Source: Octopus bimaculoides (taxonomy: Eukaryota). From it: DNA of 64,000 bases. Under the pieces are notes generated by a model, which made no database searches, was not told the DNA's origin, and worked only from the letters and a program-made list of their open reading frames with translations. Made by a program: the position numbers and the translations under genes. Location: contig NC_068983.1 of assembly GCF_001194135.2 (NCBI RefSeq), forward strand, positions 83,610,421-83,674,420, in the 5' to 3' direction. Shown here piece after piece: positions 1 to 45,790 of this stretch; within the stretch, counting starts at the first letter, position 1, and every line of letters starts with the position of its first letter.

Positions 1-196
1 TTTTTCTTGAATTCAGGAAGACTCAATAACATAATTATAGTGAATGATAATACAGTACATACTTCTAGCATCAATGTGATTTATATAAGTTTGAAATTCA
101 GAAATTAAAGTTAATACATCAAATTTATTTAAAAGTATATTCAATTTAATTTTAGTTTTAGATTGACTATTTTCATGTTAGTATGAATTGAATTGT

Positions 197-1319: not shown

Positions 1320-1900
1320 TTTTGTTTTTCACGTGTGACACATGAGGTTTTCGAGCGAGATCGTCGCTGGTGCCCCTGGACTGGCTCATATGCAGGCGAC
1401 ACATGAAATCTTTCGAGCGGGATCGTTGCCAGTGCACCTGGACTGGCTCTTGTGCGGGTGACACATGAAATTATTTGAGTGAGTTTGTTGCCAGTGCCCC
1501 TGAACTGGCTCTTGTGTGGGACCGTCATAGGATTTTCGAGTGAGATCGTTGCCAGTGCCCCTGGACTGGCTCATGTGCGGGCGACACATGAAATCTTTCG
1601 AGTGGGATTGTTGCCGGTGCCCCTGGATTGGCTCATGTGCGGGCGACACATGAAATCTTCCGAGCGGGATCGTTGCCGGTGCCCCTGGGCTGGCTCNNNN
1701 NNNNNNNNNNNNNNNNNNNNNNNNNNNNNNNNNNNNNNNNNNNNNNNNNNNNNNNNNNNNNNNNNNNNNNNNNNNNNNNNNNNNNNNNNNNATGCAGGCG
1801 ACACATGAAATCTTTCGAGCGGGATCGTTGCCAGTGCACCTGGACTGGCTCTTGTGCGGGTGACACATGAGGTTTCTCGAGCGAGATGAGCATGGCCGTT
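1320..1900. repeat. ~62-bp tandem minisatellite (about 9 units, interrupted by an N-gap)
   Basis: ACATGAAA anchor recurs at 1401, 1463, 1586 and 1648; unit approx GGCGACACATGAAATCTTTCGAGCGGGATCGTTGCCAGTGCCCCTGGACTGGCTCTTGTGCG. Confidence 0.9.
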
Positions 1901-2116
1901 GCCAGTACTGCCTGACTGGCCTTCGTGCGGGTGACATGTAAAAGCACCCACTACACTCTCTGAGTGGTTGGCGTTAGGAAGGGCATCCAGCTGTAGAAAC
2001 TCTGCCAAATCAGATTGGAGCCTGGTGTAGCCATCTGGTTTCACCAGTCCTCAGTCAAATCATCCAACCCATGCTAGCATGGAAAGCGGACGTTAAACGA
2101 CGACGACGACGACGAT
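1320..2116 (+). mobile_element. 3' UTR/tail of an RTE-type LINE containing a 62-bp minisatellite
   Basis: Ends GGAAAGCGGACGTTAAA(CGA)n; nearly identical to 14349-14635 (reverse) and 45580-45790. The 14349 copy lies downstream of an RT ORF on the same strand. Confidence 0.8.
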
Positions 2117-3298: not shown

Positions 3299-6018
3299 TT
3301 TAACTCCAGGTCAGCTGTGATTGAGCAGACCTACAACAAAGACTATTTCCATCTTGTACTTTGTTTTTTTGGTGGGAACATCTAGAATTAGGACTACATT
3401 ATATAATGTGTTCTTTTTCTAAGAAAGGAGAGTGTCATTTGAGAGAAATTTGGTTGCTATATCTTGCAAACTGAGTAACTACCTATCGGCTTCTTCATTG
3501 TTTCATTACTGCAGCAAGACAGAATGGTTAAGACGTTTGCTTCACAACCAGGAAGTTTGATCCTCCTTTGTAACATATTCAACATTTTTGAATAAAGCTG
3601 AGTTAACAGATACTAGTCAGAAGCCATCGAATGGATCATAACTGTATTATACACACTGTATCATACTGATTCTCGTTGAGAATTACATTAAGTTATACAC
3701 ATTAATTTAAAGAAATTATGATTCACATGAGCAAACAAATAAATACTCATCATCAAAATCAAGAGAGGATCTATTTAAGTTGTTGTTGTTGTTCTATAAT
3801 TAAAATAGCAAATTCAAAACCATTCTTGTCTGGTTTGGCACTGGTGATTAAGTATCAAATATTCTTTCCTTGTTACATTGGTTTCAGCCCAGGTAATGAT
3901 CTTCATTCAGTGCAGTACTGGGCCGAAAAACCAGCAAGCTTGGGACCAGAAGTGGCCCAGATTTATGGTTGTACTAGTTTTCTGGAGTAAGCCTAAATAT
4001 ATAATTAAAATATAAAATAAACTGTGAAAAGAAAAGAATTAAATTGTATTTAACAGATTCAAATGAACACATTTCTAAAGCAGTCTCTTTGATATCTATT
4101 AATCCACTTAAAATTCTTAAAATATATCATATTGTAGCATGTATACAACATAAAGTTTAGAGGAGAAAATTAATTGAAGAAAAGTAAAGAACATAATTCT
4201 ATTCAACAGATACAGGTACAAATTAATACACCTCTAAAGCAGAGTCTATTCAATCTTTATTAATACAAATACAACAGCAAAGAACAAAACCTTTTAAAAC
4301 ATTGTTTGCAAATTAATCAACTTCATAAACATAGTCTGTTTACTCAATACAGGGTACAGTATATTGTATGATGTTACCCAGTATTCCAGGATTTCTAGAA
4401 GCCAGATAAGAGATCCATTACTATATTGCAATTTACTATGACTACTCATATGTTAAAGTAAACTCTTAACTCTGTTTCTATTTTGTAGTTGTATCCTTCA
4501 TGGTAGGATATGACTTCAGTTTCAAATGACTAACAAAAGGCTCCCAACAATGGAAACTTTACATTTCTTAACCTTTCGTAAATGGCAGATAGACAAATTA
4601 ATTGTACCTATTTTACAGTCAGACTGACTGAGTCAGTTAAGAATTAAGTATCTTCGTCATGTATGACCCAAATAAAGGCAGAACCAATAAATATGGTCAC
4701 CTGCTTTGCTAAAGATTGTAACAAAATTTCCCACAAATCACACTCAACTGTTTTGAAGCACATTTTGAATAATGTGGTTCTGGATTCCCTGTGCATAGAA
4801 GAAAAGACAAGATGGTCAAGGCTGGAATGCCACTGATCCCAGGTCTGTTCCATTAAGATTAATATGGGGTAAAGCAACCACCACAGCAAAAGCAATAACA
4901 GCTAACTAAAGTATGCAAACAATGGATCATTCAGTTAGCAATGGAAAACCTGACACAACAAGCAATGGTTCTCTAAGCATTATAAAATATCATGATTACT
5001 GCATTATGTTTTTACTGTTATTATTTCACCTCAGTGCAGACTTGAATTACTTGATTTTGCCAAGTTACAATGGACAGTTTGTGGGAGATAATAAACTAAG
5101 AATGCACACCTGAATTCAATATTTCATTCTCAGAGATAAACCAATGCCAAATGCCTAAAAGCCAAATAAATCTTTAATGAAAAAGTTTGGTTGTTATTTG
5201 AATCCTTTCTTGGAGACGATAGCAGTAGCAATGTTAGAGCTGGAAACTACTTTTGTAACAATTACAGAAGAGTGAGGAGTATGTTGTTGCTGTTATTCAT
5301 ATTCTTAAGCTCCAGGTCAATGCTGACTGTCCTCACCTATGGCATTTCAATAGTTAATTGTATGTTGAGTGCCAAGTCAACCATGATTGAGCAGCAAACT
5401 TATCATCTAAAACACTCCAGCCATAACAAACCTGTTTTCACACACACACACATTATATATATATATATATACATGTCAAAGTGCATAGCCTAATGGTTGG
5501 GGTATTGTACTCATGGCTGGTCGCTACATTGTGGGTTTGATTCCCAAACCAAGCTGTACATTGTGTTCTTGAGCAAAACACTTCATTTCCTATTGCTCCA
5601 CTCCACTCAACTGTAAATGGATAACCCTGCGATGGAACAGCCTTCCAATCAGGGGTAATGTTGGCTTGTTTGCTTATCAAGCAGGATGACATCATTTGAA
5701 AGCTAAAACGATGTAAAACACATTGTGACCAGTGATGTATAACAATATCTGGTAGTCTGGTCAATACCATGAGATACATATATACAATTCGATTTTGAGC
5801 AGAGCCATTGCTTGATTTCCTTATGCCCCAGAATATCATCGATGAGCTGTATAAATATGACTTTTGAGGCCTGCCAAAGACTTGCATGCTTTTTGACAAT
5901 TAGTGCAAGAAAACTTGGTGATTGTATAGTCTACAGTTCCATGAACTTTACTATGCCTTTTCAAGCTAATTTTTGATCTGCATTCTTTATGACAGAGTAT
6001 GCATTCGAAATCATCTGT

Positions 6019-6577
6019 CTATCTATAATCAATATGCAGTTGTGCAATGTGTGATTTCACATGGCTCTTTAGCCCAGACTTACTGAGACAAATCTTTCCA
6101 CATTTATCACATGTAAGATCATTACATTCATTAATGCTTGTTAGAACATCATTCCTGTCACTTTTTCTCATCGGTCTTTTGATCTTTGCATGCTCCATTC
6201 TCTTCTTTACAAATTCATTTGTGCCTTCATACACAACTTTTTTTCCACTTTTCTTGACAATGTGCTAAACCTTCCCAGTTGTCAATTGGAACATTTATCT
6301 TATTCAATCCCAACTTCAGACAATCTTTGTACCTCATCTTTGGTTTGTGGGATGAACACTTACCTGCCATCAATTCTCCATAAAAATGTTGTTTAGGCAT
6401 TCTGTCATCTGTCATTCTGACTAAGTGTCCATTCCATCTCAATCTGTATTGCAATAACAAAGCCTCAATACTGACGCATTTCCATCTTTCAAGCACCTCA
6501 TCGTCACTCAGAAACATTTTCCAACATACATACATTTCATTAGAGGATATTTTAACTTTGAGAAGGAATGGTTGCAT
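6019..6577 (-). mobile_element. RTE-clade LINE ORF C-terminal remnant with C2H2 zinc finger
   Basis: RLRWNGHLVRMTDDRMPKQHFYGEL...KPKMRYKDCLK...WEGLAH, followed by CDKCGKICLSKSGLKSHVKSH; frameshifted between two track ORFs. Confidence 0.9.
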
Positions 6578-7282
6578 CCAAGGAGTACTGGTTCAATACC
6601 TAGTATTGTTGGGGAATGAAATTCCCTTAAAAGAATAGGTATATATTAAGCATATAGTTTATATCCAGTTGAAAGAAGAAAAGAAAATGGAGACAAGGAA
6701 GTTAATTATTTGTTGTTAACAAATTGGCCATCTTCACTTCTTACAGCCGTTTCAATTAATATTCAATAATTTAATTACAAATTTGTACATTAAATTTGCA
6801 TTTATGTAAGCATAATCTCATCAGAGGACAAAAAAAGCTGTGCCATGGAATGTTATATGTCGACCTATTTCAGCAGACTTTCTTAAAAAAGAGAATACAT
6901 TGGACTGATATATATATATAGGGAGATTTAACTGTTGTTTCAAGATGGTTGAATGATCAAATAGGGGTCCGTCCATTGGCTTTAACCAATAGACAGTTAC
7001 ATCATACTTCTATGTATTTAAGGTGCACGCCATGCACACCAATACGTAGTAGCTGAGCTGTCGTACTGGATTTTTTTTATTTGTTGCATAAACTGCTTGA
7101 ATGTTTGCATGCAGCCTATCTGCAGACGACTGTGATCATGTGAAATACATTGATTTGTATTACACGTTCTTTGCAGTATGCTGCAGCAAATCTGCAATAA
7201 ACCTTGATGTAGCTAAAATAGTCTTTGTACATAAGTTTGTTGTTTTTTTATGTTGGCTAAATACGTGAGGGTTAGGTCTATG

Positions 7283-7835
7283 TACGAGATCTGTTCAAAA
7301 AGAAAATGAACATTAAAAAAAAGTTATTTAGATACCAATCAATCAGACCAATCTCCTTCAAAAGAGTTCTTTCCACAGCTCACGTTTTTATTTTTGTTTT
7401 GCTTTATTTTTGTTTTGTTTTTTTGTTTTGAATTTCGTCTTCAGAGGAAGCATGCAATTTTCGTGAATTTTCCTCAGTCATTTCTATTGCTTGAAATCGG
7501 CGACATTTGGGGGTGGGGTAGATTTCAACTTCGGAGAGTGAAAAAAGAAAAGTCTACGGGAGCCAAATCGGAAGATTAGGGTAACTAGGGGACAAGAGTC
7601 GTCTCAAGTTTTGCCAGAAGTAATGGACGAGAAATAACACGTGTGCAAATGCGTTGTTATTCTTTTAGTCCATGTCCCAAGTCTCTTTCTTAGCACTGCT
7701 TCTCCCAATTGCATCGGGACATCCGAGTTAAACTTTCTGCTGATCGCTTGACGATGTGAAACAAACTCGTGATGAAAGCACTCTCCCAATAACAAAAAGA
7801 CGATCATCACCACTGTAGCGAGGCACAAAGAAGTC
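7283..7835 (-). mobile_element. Tc1/mariner transposase C-terminal fossil with one TIR
   Basis: HHEFVS..Q.I..KFNSDV..QLGEAV.RKR..WT, FFF.SPKLKST and SFEGD motifs; TA|CGAGATCTGTTCAAAAAG TIR-like end at 7283. Confidence 0.8.
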
Positions 7836-8061
7836 AGCGCCATTTTGAAATAGCGGGATCCCGCCTGCAACCATTGCCATACGCGAGAAAAAAACGAGAT
7901 CGCGCCTGCAACCATTATTCAAGGAAAAGACAACAACATTTTCCCCCTCATGCTTTACATAATGTTCGAATTGATTTGGTGTATTTGCTGATCGTGTGAA
8001 GAATTGTTGGCTGTTTTGTGCTGCTTTGCAGCGGTTTTCTGGTTGTGCTTTCTCTCCGCCT
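7836..8061 (-). mobile_element. Unclassified DNA-element end, possibly Kolobok-like
   Basis: Minus strand reads TTAA|AGGCGG (Kolobok-type TTAA plus RR terminus); internal direct repeat CGCCTGCAACCATT; CpG-rich. Other end not found. Confidence 0.3.
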
Positions 8062-8669
8062 TTAAGGAGAGTTAGCCATGGCAATGGTAGAGAATATGTT
8101 CTGTTCGGACCTAAATGGGTCCGAACTGTCCTCTTCCGAGGAGGAGCTCGTACGAGCAATTGATAGAATGGACAAGTGTTTAAGGAAGAAAAATTTTGCT
8201 GAAATGACAGAAGTCACAAAAAAAAAAAAAAAAANNNNNNNNNNNNNNNNNNNNNNNNNNNNNNNNNNNNNNNNNNNNNNNNNNNNNNNNNNNNNNNNNN
8301 NNNNNNNNNNNNNNNNNNNNNNNNNNNNNNNNNNNNNNNNNNNNNNNNNNNNNNNNNNNNNNNNNNNNNNNNNNNNNNNNNNNNNNNNNNNNNNNNNNNN
8401 NNNNNNNNNNNNNNNNNNNNNNNNNNNNNNNNNNNNNNNNNNNNNNNNNNNNNNNNNNNNNNNNNNNNNNNNNNNNNNNNNNNNNNNNNNNNNNNNNNNN
8501 NNNNNNNNNNNNNNNNNNNNNNNNNNNNNNNNNNNNNNNNNNNNNNNNNNNNNNNNNNNNNNNNNNNNNNNNNNNNNNNNNNNNNNNNNNNNNNNNNNNN
8601 NNNNNNNNNNNNNNNNNNNNNNNNNNNNNNNNNNNNNNNNNNNNNNNNNNNNNNNNNNNNNNNNNNNNN

Positions 8670-8768
8670 GCCGACTACATAAACAAACGATTCTGAAACA
8701 ATTAACCCTAACCCTAGGGTTGGGGTTAAAGCAAATAAAACGAAGAATCGTTTGTTTATGTAGTCGGC
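8670..8768. repeat. Nested inverted repeat (25-bp perfect arms around a 14-bp telomere-hexamer palindrome)
   Basis: 8670-8694 is the exact reverse complement of 8744-8768; 8702-8729 = TTAACCCTAACCCT|AGGGTTGGGGTTAA. Confidence 0.95.
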
Positions 8769-10000
8769 AGTTAATGTATATCGGCTGAATGGACGTCAGT
8801 GATTGGTTGAAATTATCGAAATAAGACAATTTTTTACATGAAATAAATTCGAATCCAAAAGTATTTTTCTGTTCTATAACACAAAATAGATAAGTATACG
8901 AAGTTTGAAAGTCTTTCGGTACCAAAAACACTACGTAAAACATTAATGAAAAATGTGGCCCCCGTTTTAAAAAAAGATCCAGAAGTTTTTCTTAGAAATA
9001 CAATATTTAAATTAAATAACGCAATACGTATATTTTAAACACAAATTCAAAGCTTTTGTCAGGGTTAAAATATGAATGGAACAATGTTGTATCATAACTC
9101 ATAATGTCCAAAGGTTCAATATAATTTAATCGCATAATTCTTCACTCGTTGATAATTTTCGTAAGAAAATAATATAGCGAGCATTAATCCGCGCAAATAT
9201 CAAGAAAGATACATGTACTGGAGAGGAAAGCATGTTGGGAAAATATAGATGATATACTACAGCATAAAATCTATTTCTGTTTGTTTTGCTTTGTGCTATT
9301 GTTTGTTGTTTGTAGCGCTGAATAAATGGCACGGAACTACAAAAGTTTTAGAATCTCTGAAATAGAGGGGTTCCATAGTTATATCGCTATTGTCACCTTT
9401 ATACAGTTATACCGTCAATGCAAAAGTTGTTGAAAGGGGTAATTTATTGAGATTATTAATCCCACAGTTGTGATTGTGGAAAAGAAAAATATTCGGAAAT
9501 TTTTAAATACATTGGATGTATGTTTGAATTTATAGATATCGATATACTAAAATTTACTGAAATTGCCCGAAGAAGATTTTAAAATAATTCCCATCTTATA
9601 AAAAAAAAAGTTTTTATTAAAATAAATATTCTTCATATGTTGAATTCTTATCAACTTTTAGTTTCGGTCTTCCACACTATACATACATATATGTATATGT
9701 TTATATATTTATTTATATATCTATATGCGTGTGCATGTATTTAAATATACGAATTTGTATATGTGTGTGTGTAAATGTATATATGTATATAGAGAGATTT
9801 ATTAATGAGGGTAGAAATTGATATTAATCAATTAAAACCAGTGGTCTAGCATATTTTTGTATGTATATAGGGAGAGATAGTTAGATATATACATATAGGG
9901 CTTTCCTATAAGTAGGTTATCTCCCTTGGCTAGGCGGCGCTCCATGTAGACAATTAAACTTCCGCAGACTATCCACGCCATTGTTATTGTTTTACGTCTT

Positions 10001-10118
10001 ATGGATACAAAGCAGCTCGATGATTCCGCTATCGAAGTACTTCTGTGCCTGAGTTAAAGAAATATTTAAGATTATATGGACAGTGTGTTACTGGAAGAAA
10101 GGCGGACTTGATTGAAAG
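10001..10118 (+). pseudogene. SAP-domain N-terminus of a transposon accessory gene (1-nt frameshift)
   Basis: MDTKQLDD/FRYRSTSVPELKKYLRLYGQCVTGRKADLIER matches the SAP pattern (ELK..L..G....G.KADLIER); followed by a possible AG|gtataa donor. Confidence 0.8.
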
Positions 10119-10576
10119 GTATAAAAATTCTGTCGATGAAGAACGTCAACAAAGTAAATTCATCGGATGATAAGTCTGAAATATTTTGCAAATAAGTTAA
10201 ATACGGTTTTACGTGGGCATAGCTTTCAGCAACCATTCACTGATTTGGCCATGAGCATGATGAGGTGAGAAGAGATAGGGACAGTCACACTATAAAGTCT
10301 AATAATTAGAGGAATATTAGATTCAATGCTATAAAGAAAAATATCATAGCTAGGTTTACTCGGAATTCCCACATTCATTCAGAACATTAACAACAATTTC
10401 AATGTATTTATTATTTGAATGCAAAATTCTTTATTAAAAATACCTGTACATCAACACACCAATTATTAGATTAAACATTCGTGTTTAGCCCAACGTACAC
10501 CACTTGAATTTTAACATGTTCTAATCTGTTAATGAAGAGATAAATCAAAGAGACATTTCACTCATCATGCACTTAC

Positions 10577-10846
10577 TGATATTTTAAATACTTTATTTGG
10601 AAAAACGGATGGCAAGGGGTGATCTTTCGATGGTCCATTACAATTGACGAAATGCTGGGAACACATTTGGCTATTTGCAGTGTAAACAAAGTCTTTCCTC
10701 ACAAGTCTCGATCTCTGAAGCCAAATACGACGAATAGCTACGTTTGCAGGATATCTATGTAGTGAAATAACTTTGCTGTCTACATTCTTCCCTCTATAGT
10801 GGCTGCATATACAGCAGTATTTGCGTGATTTCTTCGGGTGAGTCGT
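10577..10846 (-). pseudogene. THAP (C2CH) DNA-binding domain exon of a transposase
   Basis: Open 90 codons THPKKSRKYCCICSHYRGKNVDSKVISLHRYPANVAIRRIWLQRSRLVRKDFVYTANSQMCSQHFVNCNGPSKDHPLPSVFPNKVFKIS ending at a gtaagt donor; ACG sits where the start ATG is expected. Confidence 0.85.
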
Positions 10847-11839
10847 CTGCGGAAGTTAAAGCAAGTCACTGAGCATGCGTACATGTCATACGGGAGAGTT
10901 CCAATCAGGGGTGGATAACAACCTTATAGGAACCCCCTATACGTAATATATCCGTATATGCATTTATGTACACTAGTGTAGGTGTGTACTAACGGGTTAC
11001 AATTTTAATATAGCAAATTATTTTGGGCATGTAAAACAAGGTGAATCAAAATAACGATGTGTACATTCATTTTTAATATGGTTCGGCAGATTCAAGCTTA
11101 TACATTGCTTTTCACTGTTGGATTTACCCTTGAAGAATGACTTCTCATAGAAAATGTACGTAAACAACATATTCGCAAGTGATGTCGATGGACTAACAAA
11201 TACGGGTGATTCAGCGTTTTGCACCTCCTCAAAGATAGACATTACCGGGTGTGTCATAGTCCATGGCTTTTATACATACAAAAACAACACTCTACAGCAA
11301 CTCGTCACACCAAGCTCTTGAGGGAAAGTTAATTTAAAGCACGAACTCAGAACGCTGAGTGAAAGAATTCGTTATCGTAGAAAGATGTTCTACGCAACCG
11401 GCACACATACTAAGTTTGCTTTCAATTCATAGGCATTGTATCGGGAGATGAGGAAGAAAGACATTACCGTTAAGAAAACCACTTCTCAACAAGATCTTGA
11501 AAATAGATTTCAACCAGAATGCATCGTAGCTAGATGCAGTTGGGAAAAATGTTCTGCTAACCTCAACAGTAAAACATTTACAATCGACCCAGAAACACAG
11601 CACTTCCGCCTATCAGTCCTAATTGACTTGGGGATAAGACCTCGTATTCACCGAAAATAGGAATGAACTCTTGTGTATCGGAAACTCTGGTCTTGCTGGT
11701 GGCTACCACATCTAAATCTAGTGATATGGGATTGTTGAGCATGTGGCCCTGTTCCCATGTAACAGAGATGACGAAGAAATTAAATAACAAGTATCAAACA
11801 AGAAAATAAGAAAAGAGGAAAATAACCACATATACAAAA

Positions 11840-41283: not shown

Positions 41284-42549
41284 GTAAGTTGCAGATATAT
41301 GATGTTAATAGGTAAATAAATTAGTAATAAAGGAGAATTTTTGAATGAAACAGTAAAAGTAAAAGGGAAAATGAGGAAGTGGTGGAAAAGTTAATCAAAC
41401 AAAATACAAGATACACAAATATACAAAGTATATATATATATATATATATATATNNNNNNNNNNNNNNNNNNNNNNNNNNNNNNNNNNNNNNNNNNNNNNN
41501 NNNNNNNNNNNNNNNNNNNNNNNNNNNNNNNNNNNNNNNNNNNNNNNNNNNNNNNNNNNNNNNNNNNNNNNNNNNNNNNNNNNNNNNNNNNNNNNNNNNN
41601 NNNNNNNNNNNNNNNNNNNNNNNNNNNNNNNNNNNNNNNNNNNNNNNNNNNNNNNNNNNNNNNNNNNNNNNNNNNNNNNNNNNNNNNNNNNNNNNNNNNN
41701 NNNNNNNNNNNNNNNNNNNNNNNNNNNNNNNNNNNNNNNNNNNNNNNNNNNNNNNNNNNNNNNNNNNNNNNNNNNNNNNNNNNNNNNNNNNNNNNNNNNN
41801 NNNNNNNNNNNNNNNNNNNNNNNNNNNNNNNNNNNNNNNNNNNNNNNNNNNNNNNNNNNNNATATATATATATATATATATACCAGTATAAACTGTAATT
41901 TTTGTATAATTATGTATTGTTAATATAACAATACATAAACTATAAAACTATAAATTTATTTATTGATTCTTGAAGGAATTGAACACACACACACGCACAC
42001 ACACACACACACACGCACGCACACATATTATATCTTGCATTGGACATATGGTATTATTCCTGTGGTTTTCCACCGTTATGTATCTATTTTTACTATAAGA
42101 TGTATACCAGTATATTTATATATATATATGTTGGGCCTCACGGATGCAATGACCGAGAGCTTTGGCATTATGTTGTGCTTGAGAAGGAGACCCATCAAAC
42201 AGAACAAAATCAGTCATGGTAGGTACCCGTGCCAGTGGTAGCACATAAAAGCACCCTGGTGTCACACAAATGGCACATAAAAGCATCAATTACACTCTCA
42301 GAGTGGTTGATTTTAGGAAGGGCATCCAGCTGTAGAAAGCCATGCCAAATCAGATTGGAGTGTGGTGCCACCTTCCAGTGTGCCAGCCCAGTCAAACCGT
42401 CCAACCCATGCCAGTATGGACAATGGATGTTAAATGATGACGATGATGATGATGATTATGAAACAAAGCATCAGAACACCAGACCTAGATACAAGATATA
42501 CAAAGATTTGCCGGACCTTGATACAAGATACACACCAGTAATTTAGGTA

Positions 42550-42606
<57 letters not shown>

Positions 42607-42878
42607 NNNNNNNNNNNNNNNNNNNNNNNNNNNNNNNNNNNNNNNNNNNNNNNNNNNNNNNNNNNNNNNNNNNNNNNNNNNNNNNNNNNNNNNNNNNNNN
42701 NNNNNNNNNNNNNNNNNNNNNNNNNNNNNNNNNNNNNNNNNNNNNNNNNNNNNNNNNNNNNNNNNNNNNNNNNNNNNNNNNNNNNNNNNNNNNNNNNTAT
42801 ATATGTATGTATATTTATATGTCATCATCATCATATACATATATATATATATGATATATATATGTATGTATATATATG

Positions 42879-45289: not shown

Positions 45290-45790
45290 GTGAAATCAAA
45301 ATCAAAATCGAACTAAATTCGGCAACTGACCCCCATGCCAACGTCTTCTCCTTCATTGGACACTAAATTCACCTTGCGAAGACCTGTTGGGGCAAGCGAA
45401 AGCGAAATCGTGATGGCACCTGTATCAGTGGAGCACTAAGAGCACCGTTCGAGCGTATCGTTACCAGCGTCGCCTTCCTAACACTTGTGCCGGTGGCACG
45501 TGAAAAGTCGTTCGAGCAAGATCGTTGCCAGTTCTGCTGGACTGTGCAGGTGGCACGTAAAATACACCATTTTGAGCGTGGTCATTGCCAGTACCGCCTG
45601 ACTGGCCTTCGTGCTGGTGGCACGTAAAAGCACCCACTACACTCTCTGAGTGGTTGGCATTAGGAAGGGCATCCAGCTGTAGAAACTCTGCCAAATCAGA
45701 TTGGAGCCTGGTGTAACCATCTGGTTCACTAGTCATCAGTCAAATCGTCCAACCCATGCTAGCATGGAAAGCAGACGTTAAACGATGATC
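45290..45790 (+). mobile_element. RTE-type LINE 3' UTR/tail
   Basis: Same family as 1900-2116, ending GTTAAACGATGAT. Confidence 0.8.

What the first reader, a model, noticed from the sequence alone, without database searches (positions are those of the whole stretch)
9897..10938. Compact two-gene transposon shell: convergent SAP and THAP heads between imperfect TIRs
Seen: 25-bp TIRs (20/25), AT on both flanks, a frameshifted SAP domain starting 104 nt from the left end on +, and a 90-codon THAP exon with a gtaagt donor starting 92 nt from the right end on -. Neither appears in the ORF track. Established knowledge: ISL2EU elements have RR..YY termini, AT TSDs, and encode a THAP-DDE transposase plus a second, YqaJ-like exonuclease gene. 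Inference: this is a central-deletion derivative that kept both DNA-binding modules and lost both catalytic domains. It could be an undescribed cephalopod family, or a source of repressor-like DNA-binding peptides. A similar terminus-like string lies at 9364-9378.
Basis: partly seen in the sequence, partly recalled or inferred. Interest (0 to 1): 0.72.

Follow-up and report, generated by a model that had tools for sequence, protein, structure and literature searches.

The report
Gutted ISL2EU transposon copy in octopus
This 1 kb stretch is a dead, internally deleted copy of a known kind of cut-and-paste transposon (ISL2EU) that kept only its two ends and the first DNA-binding exon of each of its two genes, which is an ordinary, correctly read piece of junk DNA.

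Summary
Window 9897-10938 carries 25-nt inverted termini (20/25) flanked by AT. It has a 90-codon THAP exon on the minus strand (Pfam 31.3 bits) ending at a GTAAGT donor, and a SAP head on the plus strand (32 bits).

Full-length relatives in two bivalves have homologous termini and the same convergent layout. These are Sinanodonta woodiana (4333 bp, decayed) and Solemya velum (4591 bp, transposase intact). One gene is a THAP-HTH_Tnp_4-DDE_Tnp_4 transposase; the other is a SAP-SWIM-YqaJ gene. This is the published ISL2EU architecture (PHIS superfamily).

The window copy is therefore a non-autonomous internal-deletion derivative, about 3.3-3.5 kb shorter than those relatives. Both heads survive because each gene starts about 100 nt inside a terminus.

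This copy is dead. The THAP frame has no ATG, and the SAP frame carries a 1-nt deletion and an inferred 8-nt deletion. Octopus bimaculoides proteins show that other copies and other deletion variants exist.

The AT target duplication fits all three loci, but TA or TATA fit equally well. The terminus-like string at 9364-9378 is chance. The repressor-peptide idea is not supported for this copy. Overall this is a new member of a known kind, of low interest.

The parts
9895..9896 (.). AT flank, putative left copy of the 2-bp target-site duplication
   Evidence: All six flanks in the three species read ...TAT before (A/T)G. TA or TATA cannot be excluded.
9897..9921 (+). Left (SAP-side) terminal inverted repeat, AGGGCTTTCCTATAAGTAGGTTATC
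   Evidence: Matches the right terminus at 20/25. Its first 50 nt match the Sinanodonta SAP-side end at 37/51, against a shuffle maximum of 32. It is homologous to the Solemya end AGCCCTTTCCCGAAACTAGGTTATC.
9954..9976 (+). Subterminal inverted-repeat block containing TTCCGCAGAC (9960-9969)
   Evidence: the repeat finder pair I3, 23 nt at 83% with 10838-10860. The same motif TTCCGGAGAC lies at nt 73 of the Solemya SAP-side end. A role as promoter element or transposase-binding site is inferred.
10001..10183 (+). Head of the second gene (SAP-SWIM-YqaJ family). The SAP domain is at 10042-10119. The frame is broken by a 1-nt deletion near 10043 and an inferred 8-nt deletion near 10118.
   Evidence: Pfam SAP 32 bits. 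Alignments to O. bimaculoides P0006-P0022 show the frame changes and show homology ending at ...NSSDDKSE, about 10183. Homologous to the N-terminus of the Solemya second gene.
10184..10570 (.). Interior of unassigned origin. It is probably mostly intron 1 of the transposase gene and contains the deletion junction.
   Evidence: No significant match to 170 related proteins or to the bivalve elements. Sinanodonta has an intron of about 430-470 nt at the same place. The assignment is inferred.
10571..10576 (-). GTAAGT splice donor closing the THAP exon
   Evidence: GTAAGT sits at the same codon in Sinanodonta and GTTAGT in Logan contig L002.
10577..10846 (-). THAP zinc-finger exon (90 codons) of the transposase gene. 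The start codon is lost: TTHPKKSRKYCC here against MMSPKKSRKYCC in P0003.
   Evidence: Pfam THAP 31.3 bits. It is 90-97% identical to O. bimaculoides P0001/P0004 and 74% to Sinanodonta P0002. No in-frame ATG.
10838..10860 (-). Subterminal inverted-repeat block containing TTCCGCAGAC (10854-10845 on the minus strand)
   Evidence: Pair I3. The motif lies at nt 84-86 from the terminus in octopus, Sinanodonta and Solemya.
10872..10880 (-). ACGCATGCT, a GCGCATGCG-like palindrome at nt 59 from the right end
   Evidence: It lies at nt 58-59 from the THAP-side terminus in all three species. Reading it as an NRF1-type promoter element comes from general knowledge and was not tested.
10914..10938 (-). 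Right (THAP-side) terminal inverted repeat, AGGGGGTTCCTATAAGGTTGTTATC on the minus strand
   Evidence: Its first 50 nt match the Sinanodonta THAP-side end at 36/51, against a shuffle maximum of 33, and its first 100 nt at 69/103, against a maximum of 65.
10939..10940 (.). AT flank, putative right copy of the target-site duplication

Best explanation
Window 9897-10938 is a non-autonomous, internally deleted and now decaying copy of an ISL2EU-group DNA transposon (PHIS / Harbinger-like superfamily) in an octopus genome.

The parent element was about 4.3-4.6 kb, judging from its molluscan relatives. It carries two convergent genes, each starting about 100 nt inside a terminus. One is a THAP-HTH_Tnp_4-DDE_Tnp_4 transposase read inward from one end. 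The other is a SAP-SWIM-YqaJ exonuclease gene read inward from the other end.

A deletion removed the middle, probably by abortive gap repair after excision (inferred). What remains is both termini with their subterminal motifs, the first 61 codons of the exonuclease gene, and the THAP exon with part of the following intron. The two-headed look follows simply from that gene layout.

Such a copy can move only if a full-length element supplies transposase in trans. The transposase would bind the conserved ends, cut the element out and reinsert it at an AT in a TATA-like context (inferred).

This particular copy makes no protein by normal translation. The THAP frame lacks an ATG and the SAP frame is broken twice.
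For: Shown in the window:
- Both domains score above their Pfam cutoffs.
- The termini match at 20/25, with AT on both flanks.

Shown in full-length relatives:
- Sinanodonta woodiana L001 9884-14216 is 4333 bp. It has homologous ends, a THAP exon with GTAAGT at the same codon, and a DDE_Tnp_4 (50.6 bits) plus HTH_Tnp_4 body. On the other strand it has SWIM and YqaJ (52.7 bits) and a SAP-like head.
- Solemya velum L004 5841-10431 is 4591 bp. It has a 29-nt perfect inverted match and an intact 471-aa transposase, P0029, with THAP, HTH_Tnp_4 and DDE_Tnp_4 (145 bits). The convergent gene has SAP (23.8 bits), SWIM-like and YqaJ (67.5 bits).

Wider family:
- An exhaustive profile search with the THAP exon gave 247 hits. 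Among the long ones tested, those from Solemya, Argopecten and Haliotis carry all three domains (THAP, HTH_Tnp_4, DDE_Tnp_4) and the Mercenaria one has a partial DDE_Tnp_4 match.
- Octopus bimaculoides has at least 20 clusters of short proteins 79-97% identical to the two heads. Some join the SAP head to the SWIM exon (P0012-P0015). One joins SWIM directly to the right-terminal sequence of this window (P0018), which is a different deletion variant.
- The architecture matches the literature definition of ISL2EU.

Constraint on the ends:
- Synonymous sites between the octopus and bivalve THAP exons are saturated (pS 0.89) while dN is 0.17.
- Even so, the non-coding termini keep about 70% identity over 50 nt, with motifs at the same distances from the end. 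The ends are therefore constrained cis elements.
Against: - No full-length octopus copy could be fetched, so the parent, the breakpoints and the copy number in this genome are inferred from bivalve elements and from octopus protein predictions.
- The 387-nt interior matches nothing. A single clean deletion cannot be told apart from deletion plus filler DNA, or from recombination between two copies.
- The AT duplication is not proven, because the flanks are palindromic (TAT|...|ATA) and TA or TATA fit equally well.
- The termini begin AG rather than the 'usually GG' of PMC4482050.
- The flanking context is T-AT-A, not the published A-AT-T.
Confidence: 0.9

Rival explanations
1. The short element is kept because it makes THAP-only and/or SAP-only DNA-binding peptides. 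These would compete with the full transposase or exonuclease at the transposon ends and so repress the family, as the KP deletion derivative does for the Drosophila P element.
For: - Both promoter-proximal regions and both first exons are retained, and the subterminal motifs are conserved.
- Other O. bimaculoides copies carry intact short frames: P0003 has an 86-aa THAP peptide starting at ATG, and P0006 a 63-aa SAP peptide.
- The KP precedent comes from established knowledge.
Against: - In this copy the THAP frame has no ATG and the SAP frame has two frame-breaking deletions and an early stop.
- Retention of both heads follows from geometry alone, because each gene starts about 100 nt from an end.
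- No expression data are available.
- Several different deletion variants coexist, which looks like neutral decay rather than one selected form.
Confidence: 0.05
2. The element belongs to another THAP-bearing transposon superfamily (Kolobok or P element), and the SAP piece is an unrelated neighbour.
For: THAP domains occur in the transposases of Kolobok and P elements (established knowledge). The window itself contains no catalytic domain.
Against: - The closest long relatives of this THAP exon all carry HTH_Tnp_4, and most also carry DDE_Tnp_4.
- Two full-length elements with homologous termini carry that transposase together with SAP-SWIM-YqaJ.
- The flanks are TAT/ATA, not TTAA.
Confidence: 0.02
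3. This is a chance juxtaposition of two independent pseudogene fragments (a THAP gene and a SAP gene), with a spurious inverted repeat in AT-rich DNA.
For: Inverted repeats of similar length and quality are common in this low-complexity region: 20 pairs in 2 kb. In one of 300 gapped shuffles the 25-mer identity reached 20.
Against: - The same two heads, in the same convergent orientation and at the same distances from homologous termini, occur in Sinanodonta and Solemya.
- Homology to the relatives stops exactly at the proposed ends.
Confidence: 0.01

Closest known systems
ISL2EU group of the PHIS (PIF/Harbinger-ISL2EU-Spy) superfamily, e.g. ISL2EU-1_CGig / Repbase ISL2EU-8_CGi of Crassostrea gigas (PMC4482050, Table S2)
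   Same: - N-terminal THAP on an HTH plus DDE_Tnp_4 transposase.
- A second gene with a YqaJ exonuclease domain.
- Short TIRs and AT on both flanks.
- Element size of 4.3-5 kb in full-length relatives.
- A mollusc host.
   Different: - This copy lacks both catalytic domains.
- The termini start AG(G/C), not GG.
- The flank context is T-AT-A rather than A-AT-T.
[quoted passage not shown]
- Octopus was not in the 2015 survey.
KP element, an internally deleted Drosophila P element encoding a THAP-only repressor (established knowledge)
   Same: An internal-deletion derivative that keeps the N-terminal THAP DNA-binding domain and the termini and loses the catalytic part.
   Different: It belongs to a different superfamily (P element, 8-bp duplication). 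KP has an intact frame and a demonstrated repressor function. Here the frame has no start codon and nothing is known about expression.
PIF/Harbinger elements and their MITE derivatives (Tourist-like)
   Same: A related DDE_Tnp_4 transposase, a two-gene autonomous element, and abundant non-autonomous deletion derivatives mobilised in trans.
   Different: Harbinger has a 3-bp TWA duplication, a Myb/SANT second gene, and no THAP or YqaJ.
Spy elements (PMC4122938)
   Same: The same superfamily. They are found in molluscs, and some were first deposited under ISL2EU names.
   Different: Spy has one gene, no THAP or YqaJ, no target duplication, insertion in AAATTT, and GGANNNNG termini. None of this fits here.

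Membership tests
ISL2EU (PHIS superfamily) | Transposase with a DDE_Tnp_4-type catalytic domain, an HTH and an N-terminal THAP | tested here: met
   The window keeps only the THAP exon (31.3 bits). Relatives sharing that THAP subtype and homologous termini have THAP, HTH_Tnp_4 and DDE_Tnp_4: P0029, encoded by the Solemya element L004, scores 145 bits for DDE_Tnp_4, and the Sinanodonta element L001 50.6 bits. The feature is met for the family and absent from this copy by deletion.
ISL2EU (PHIS superfamily) | A second gene encoding a YqaJ-domain exonuclease | tested here: met
   YqaJ PF09588 scores 52.7 bits in L001 and 67.5 bits in L004, on the strand opposite the transposase. In L004 it lies downstream of the SAP head that is homologous to window 10001-10183. 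The window keeps only the SAP head.
ISL2EU (PHIS superfamily) | 2-bp AT target-site duplication | tested here: inconclusive
   AT lies on both flanks in the window, L001 and L004. All flanks read TAT|(A/T)G...C(A/T)|ATA, so TA or TATA with ends shifted by 1 nt fit equally well. No empty site was available.
ISL2EU (PHIS superfamily) | Short TIRs that usually begin with GG | tested here: inconclusive
   The TIRs are 25 nt and match at 20/25. The termini begin AGGG in octopus, (T/A)GGG in Sinanodonta and AGCC in Solemya. GG is at positions 2-3 in two species and absent in the third. The paper says 'usually', so this does not exclude membership.
Kolobok | TTAA target-site duplication and a Kolobok-type transposase | tested here: not met
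   No TTAA occurs at any of the six flanks. The relatives' transposase is DDE_Tnp_4 with HTH_Tnp_4.
PIF/Harbinger proper | 3-bp TWA duplication and a Myb/SANT second gene | tested here: not met
   The 3-nt flanks are TAT on the left and ATA on the right, so they are not a direct repeat. The second gene is SAP-SWIM-YqaJ.
Spy | A single gene, no THAP, no duplication, insertion in AAATTT | tested here: not met
   THAP and a second gene are present in the relatives, and the flanks are not AAA/TTT.

The most novel reading that the evidence does not exclude
The octopus family of gutted ISL2EU copies is not just debris. Copies with intact short frames, seen among the O. bimaculoides predictions, would be transcribed from the conserved terminal promoter-like blocks. 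They would yield THAP-only and SAP-only peptides that bind the transposon ends and damp transposition, giving a two-component, KP-like self-repression system in a Harbinger-like superfamily. A milder version is that the position-conserved terminal motifs (a GCGCATGCG-like palindrome at nt 58-59 and TTCCGSAGAC at nt 84-86) are shared transposase-binding and promoter elements, kept across three molluscan lineages (a cephalopod, a unionid bivalve and a protobranch bivalve).
Probability: 0.06. Interest if true: 0.5.

Novelty: new member of a known kind. Interest (0 to 1): 0.2.

Why it matters
The practical value is for annotation. In octopus assemblies these copies are being called as 'THAP-type domain-containing' and 'SAP domain-containing' proteins; at least 20 UniRef clusters do so. 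They should be masked as ISL2EU debris instead.

Three modest points may interest transposon specialists:
- The second ISL2EU gene in this molluscan lineage has a SAP-SWIM-YqaJ architecture.
- Both genes start about 100 nt inside the termini, so internal deletions automatically leave two DNA-binding heads.
- The non-coding ends keep sequence and motif spacing between a cephalopod and two distant bivalves even though synonymous sites are saturated. This marks them as the cis elements to test for transposase binding.

Nothing here challenges current understanding.

Tried and rejected
- **Terminus-like string at 9364-9378.** Its best gapped alignment to the TIR scores 17, below unrelated matches elsewhere in the window (20-22). 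A 16-mer search with 3 mismatches found only the two true termini. Rejected as chance.
- **More copies in the window.** blastn of the element and tblastn of the bivalve DDE, YqaJ and SWIM pieces found nothing else in 64 kb.
- **Origin of the interior (10184-10570).** tblastn with all 170 collected proteins, and blastn against L001 and L002, gave only noise.
- **Metagenome scan with the THAP alignment.** It returned one locus, L003, which matches only the RIWLQRARL word and has no THAP exon. Discarded.
- **Contig look-up of octopus protein P0008.** It is not on record. The other octopus hits were listed from UniRef (one also from metaclust) with no contig count, so no octopus DNA outside the window could be read.
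- **An 8-9 bp or TTAA duplication.** The window flanks match at 6/8 (ATACATAT against ATACGTAA). The two relatives show no such repeat (counted by eye from the flanks), so this was put down to the TA-rich context.
- **A longer TIR that includes the palindromic flank TAYRTAT.** In Solemya no duplication flanks that longer version. A palindromic target preference is the simpler reading, but the point is not settled.
- **Recent horizontal transfer between octopus and bivalve.** Synonymous sites are saturated, so this was rejected.
Full report
**1. What is in the sequence**

Window 9897-10938 (1042 bp) begins AGGGCTTTCCTATAAGTAGGTTATC. Read on the other strand, it ends AGGGGGTTCCTATAAGGTTGTTATC. 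The two termini match at 20 of 25 positions, and AT lies immediately outside both ends.

A second inverted block lies 58-101 nt inside the ends. It spans 9954-9976 and 10838-10860, matches at 19/23, and has the core ACTTCCGCAGAC.

On the minus strand, 10846-10577 is an open 90-codon frame...KKSRKYCCICSHYRGK...MCSQHF...HPLPSVFPNKVFKIS. It has the C2CH spacing of a THAP finger and scores 31.3 bits against Pfam THAP, with a cutoff of 23.9. GTAAGT follows at 10576-10571.

On the plus strand, an ATG at 10001 opens MDTKQLDDSAIEVL. The frame then breaks. VPELKKYLRLYGQCVTGRKADLIER continues one frame over and scores 32 bits against Pfam SAP.

Neither feature shows as an ORF. The THAP frame has no ATG after its upstream stop, and the SAP frame is shifted.

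**2. Relatives**

Word-indexed protein searches with the two peptides found only short proteins (63-151 aa). Most are from Octopus bimaculoides at 79-97% identity. There is also a 127-aa THAP protein from the freshwater mussel Sinanodonta woodiana (74% identity) and one from an unidentified Logan contig.

The octopus proteins allow the head of the second gene to be pieced together from predictions on different copies. It reads MDIKQLDDSAIEVLTVPELKKYLRLYGQYVTGRKADLTERLKGIKILSMKNVNKVNSSDDKSEVSDD...DLCKLPNFTDNDIYNYLVLRMKAKQQLRSGIFYHDRHVHSIEYHDVSESCSHCIVRC...VTGNVHSADCNC.

Against this sequence, the window copy has three defects:
- A 1-nt deletion near 10043.
- A net loss of 9 nt by about 10118, read as a further 8-nt deletion between TGAAAGG repeats. 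This is inferred at the protein level.
- Loss of homology after ...NSSDDKSE, at about 10183.

P0003 starts MMSPKKSRKYCC where the window reads TTHPKKSRKYCC, so the start codon has been lost here.

P0011 reads through the left 5' region of the window. P0018 joins ...SADCNC directly to SKSLSMRTCHTGEFQSGVDNTL, which is the plus-frame translation of window 10859-10925. Other octopus copies therefore share both terminal regions, and at least one other deletion class exists: SAP-SWIM head joined to the right end, with no THAP exon.

**3. Full-length elements**

*Sinanodonta woodiana (L001).* The locus holds a 4333-bp element at 9884-14216.
- Its ends align with those of the window.
- The THAP exon (10001-10268) ends at GTAAGT at the same codon.
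- An intron of about 430-470 nt follows, then a body homologous to residues 99-468 of transposase P0029.
- That body has HTH_Tnp_4 and DDE_Tnp_4 (50.6 bits) but several stops and a frameshift.
- On the other strand lie a SAP-like head carrying a stop, a SWIM-like finger (18.6 bits, just under its cutoff) and YqaJ (52.7 bits).

*Solemya velum (L004).* The exhaustive profile search with the THAP exon gave 247 hits at E<=0.001. Of the ten long hits scanned against Pfam, eight carry HTH_Tnp_4 and four of those also DDE_Tnp_4; the named ones are from Solemya, Mercenaria, Argopecten and Haliotis, with all three domains in the Solemya, Argopecten and Haliotis proteins. The Solemya protein P0029 is 471 aa. 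Its locus holds a 4591-bp element at 5841-10431:
- A 29-nt perfect inverted match at its ends, 7 nt of which is flank.
- An intact two-exon transposase.
- A convergent gene with SAP (23.8 bits), a SWIM-like region and YqaJ (67.5 bits). One apparent frame change lies inside YqaJ.

This architecture matches the ISL2EU group as defined in PMC4482050, PMC4122938 and PMC9179366. Mollusc families such as ISL2EU-1_CGig are already listed there.

**4. The ends are constrained cis elements**

Between the octopus and Sinanodonta THAP exons, synonymous sites are saturated (pS 0.89) while dN is 0.17. The lineages are therefore old and the domain is under purifying selection. A recent horizontal transfer is excluded.

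The non-coding termini are nevertheless conserved, and in an end-specific way. Over the first 50 nt:

| Comparison | Identity |
|---|---|
| THAP side, octopus vs Sinanodonta | 36/51 |
| SAP side, octopus vs Sinanodonta | 37/51 |
| Cross-side comparisons | 31/52 and 32/54 |
| Shuffle maximum | 32-33 |

On the THAP side, two motifs sit at the same distances from the terminus in octopus, Sinanodonta and Solemya. A GCGCATGCG-like palindrome lies at nt 58-59 and TTCCG(C/G)AGAC at nt 84-86. On the SAP side, TTCCGSAGAC lies at nt 64 in octopus and nt 73 in Solemya. The ATG of the second gene lies at nt 105-114.

Whether these blocks are promoter elements, transposase-binding sites or both is inference. 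The resemblance to NRF1 and ETS sites is from general knowledge.

**5. Target site**

All six flanks read ...TAT before (A/T)G. An AT duplication with AG...CT ends fits the window, L001 and L004.

Because TAT|...|ATA is palindromic, TA or TATA with the ends shifted by one base fits equally well. The one mismatching base, in L001, is the same under every reading.

In Solemya and octopus the palindromy extends further, as TAYRT-AT-AYRTA. This looks like a symmetric target preference. It differs from the published A|AT|T context. No TTAA, no 3-bp direct repeat and no consistent 8-bp repeat is present. An empty site is needed to settle the question.

**6. Interpretation**

The window element is an internal-deletion derivative, about 3.3-3.5 kb shorter than its full-length relatives. 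It keeps the following:
- Both ends.
- The first 61 codons of the SAP-SWIM-YqaJ gene.
- The THAP exon.
- Probably most of transposase intron 1. The 387-nt interior matches nothing, and the Sinanodonta intron at that place is of similar length.

Both genes begin about 100 nt inside a terminus and converge. Any deletion that spares a few hundred bases at each end therefore leaves two DNA-binding heads. No selection needs to be invoked.

The copy can move only with transposase supplied in trans. With a lost start codon and two frame breaks, it is not a plausible source of repressor peptides. Whether other copies with intact short frames act like the P-element KP repressor is open and was given a low probability.

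**7. Verdict**

This is a new member, or possibly an already catalogued one, of a known transposon group. Its value is mainly for masking mis-annotated 'THAP' and 'SAP' proteins in octopus gene sets.

**8. Limits**

- No octopus DNA outside the window could be read.
- Repbase and Dfam were not available.
- The source species is inferred from 79-97% identity to O. bimaculoides proteins and from the gap-rich draft-like assembly.

Noticed in passing
window 1800-2100, 14375-14635, 21043-21212, 42278-42437, 45488-45785: A dispersed repeat of about 300 bp is present at least five times in the window, at 73-84% identity and in both orientations. At 1337-1696 and 14576-14635 it adjoins a 62-bp tandem unit (GACACATGAAATCTTTCGAGCGAGATCGTTGCC...). 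It is probably a high-copy SINE-like element with a satellite-like tail.
   Followed up: partly
window 12085-12760 (+): Two overlapping ORFs. The second (12347-12760) matches the Pfam rve integrase core at 37.8 bits, so this is a fragment of an LTR retrotransposon.
   Followed up: partly
window 14532-15698 (-): A long ORF interrupted by an assembly gap. Its N-terminal part carries a PHD-type finger (27.7 bits) after a sequence that looks like the tail of a reverse transcriptase. It is probably a retroelement fragment.
   Followed up: partly
window 1697-1791, 8235-8669, 14636-15328, 19412-19766, 41454-41861, 42607-42797, 61920-62359 and three 10-nt runs: Ten runs of N, typical of a scaffolded draft assembly. 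Several sit inside microsatellites or repeats, so repeat structure near them cannot be trusted.
   Followed up: yes
window 21831-22294: A 33-bp minisatellite of 14 copies at 78% match (TAAAGGGGCTGTGTTAGAAAGGGCATCCAGCTG). It partly overlaps one copy of the dispersed repeat noted above.
   Followed up: no
L001 9884-14216, L004 5841-10431 and window 9897-10938: Intron positions in the transposase gene differ within the family. Octopus, Sinanodonta and Logan contig L002 have a donor right after the THAP domain (KVF-x-S|GTAAGT). Solemya reads through that point and has its intron about 35 codons later.
   Followed up: partly
L004 about 8367 (-): In the otherwise intact Solemya element, the two halves of the YqaJ domain lie in different frames and meet at one base. 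This is either a frameshift in that copy or an assembly error. The annotated gene model stops short of the second half.
   Followed up: no
L002 (Logan SRR25433422 contig, 985 bp): A third THAP exon of this subtype, 71% identical at the protein level, from an unidentified organism. It has the same upstream CCCCTAATTGGAACTCTCC, GCGCATGCG and CTTCCGCGGGC blocks. The contig appears to begin just inside the terminus.
   Followed up: partly
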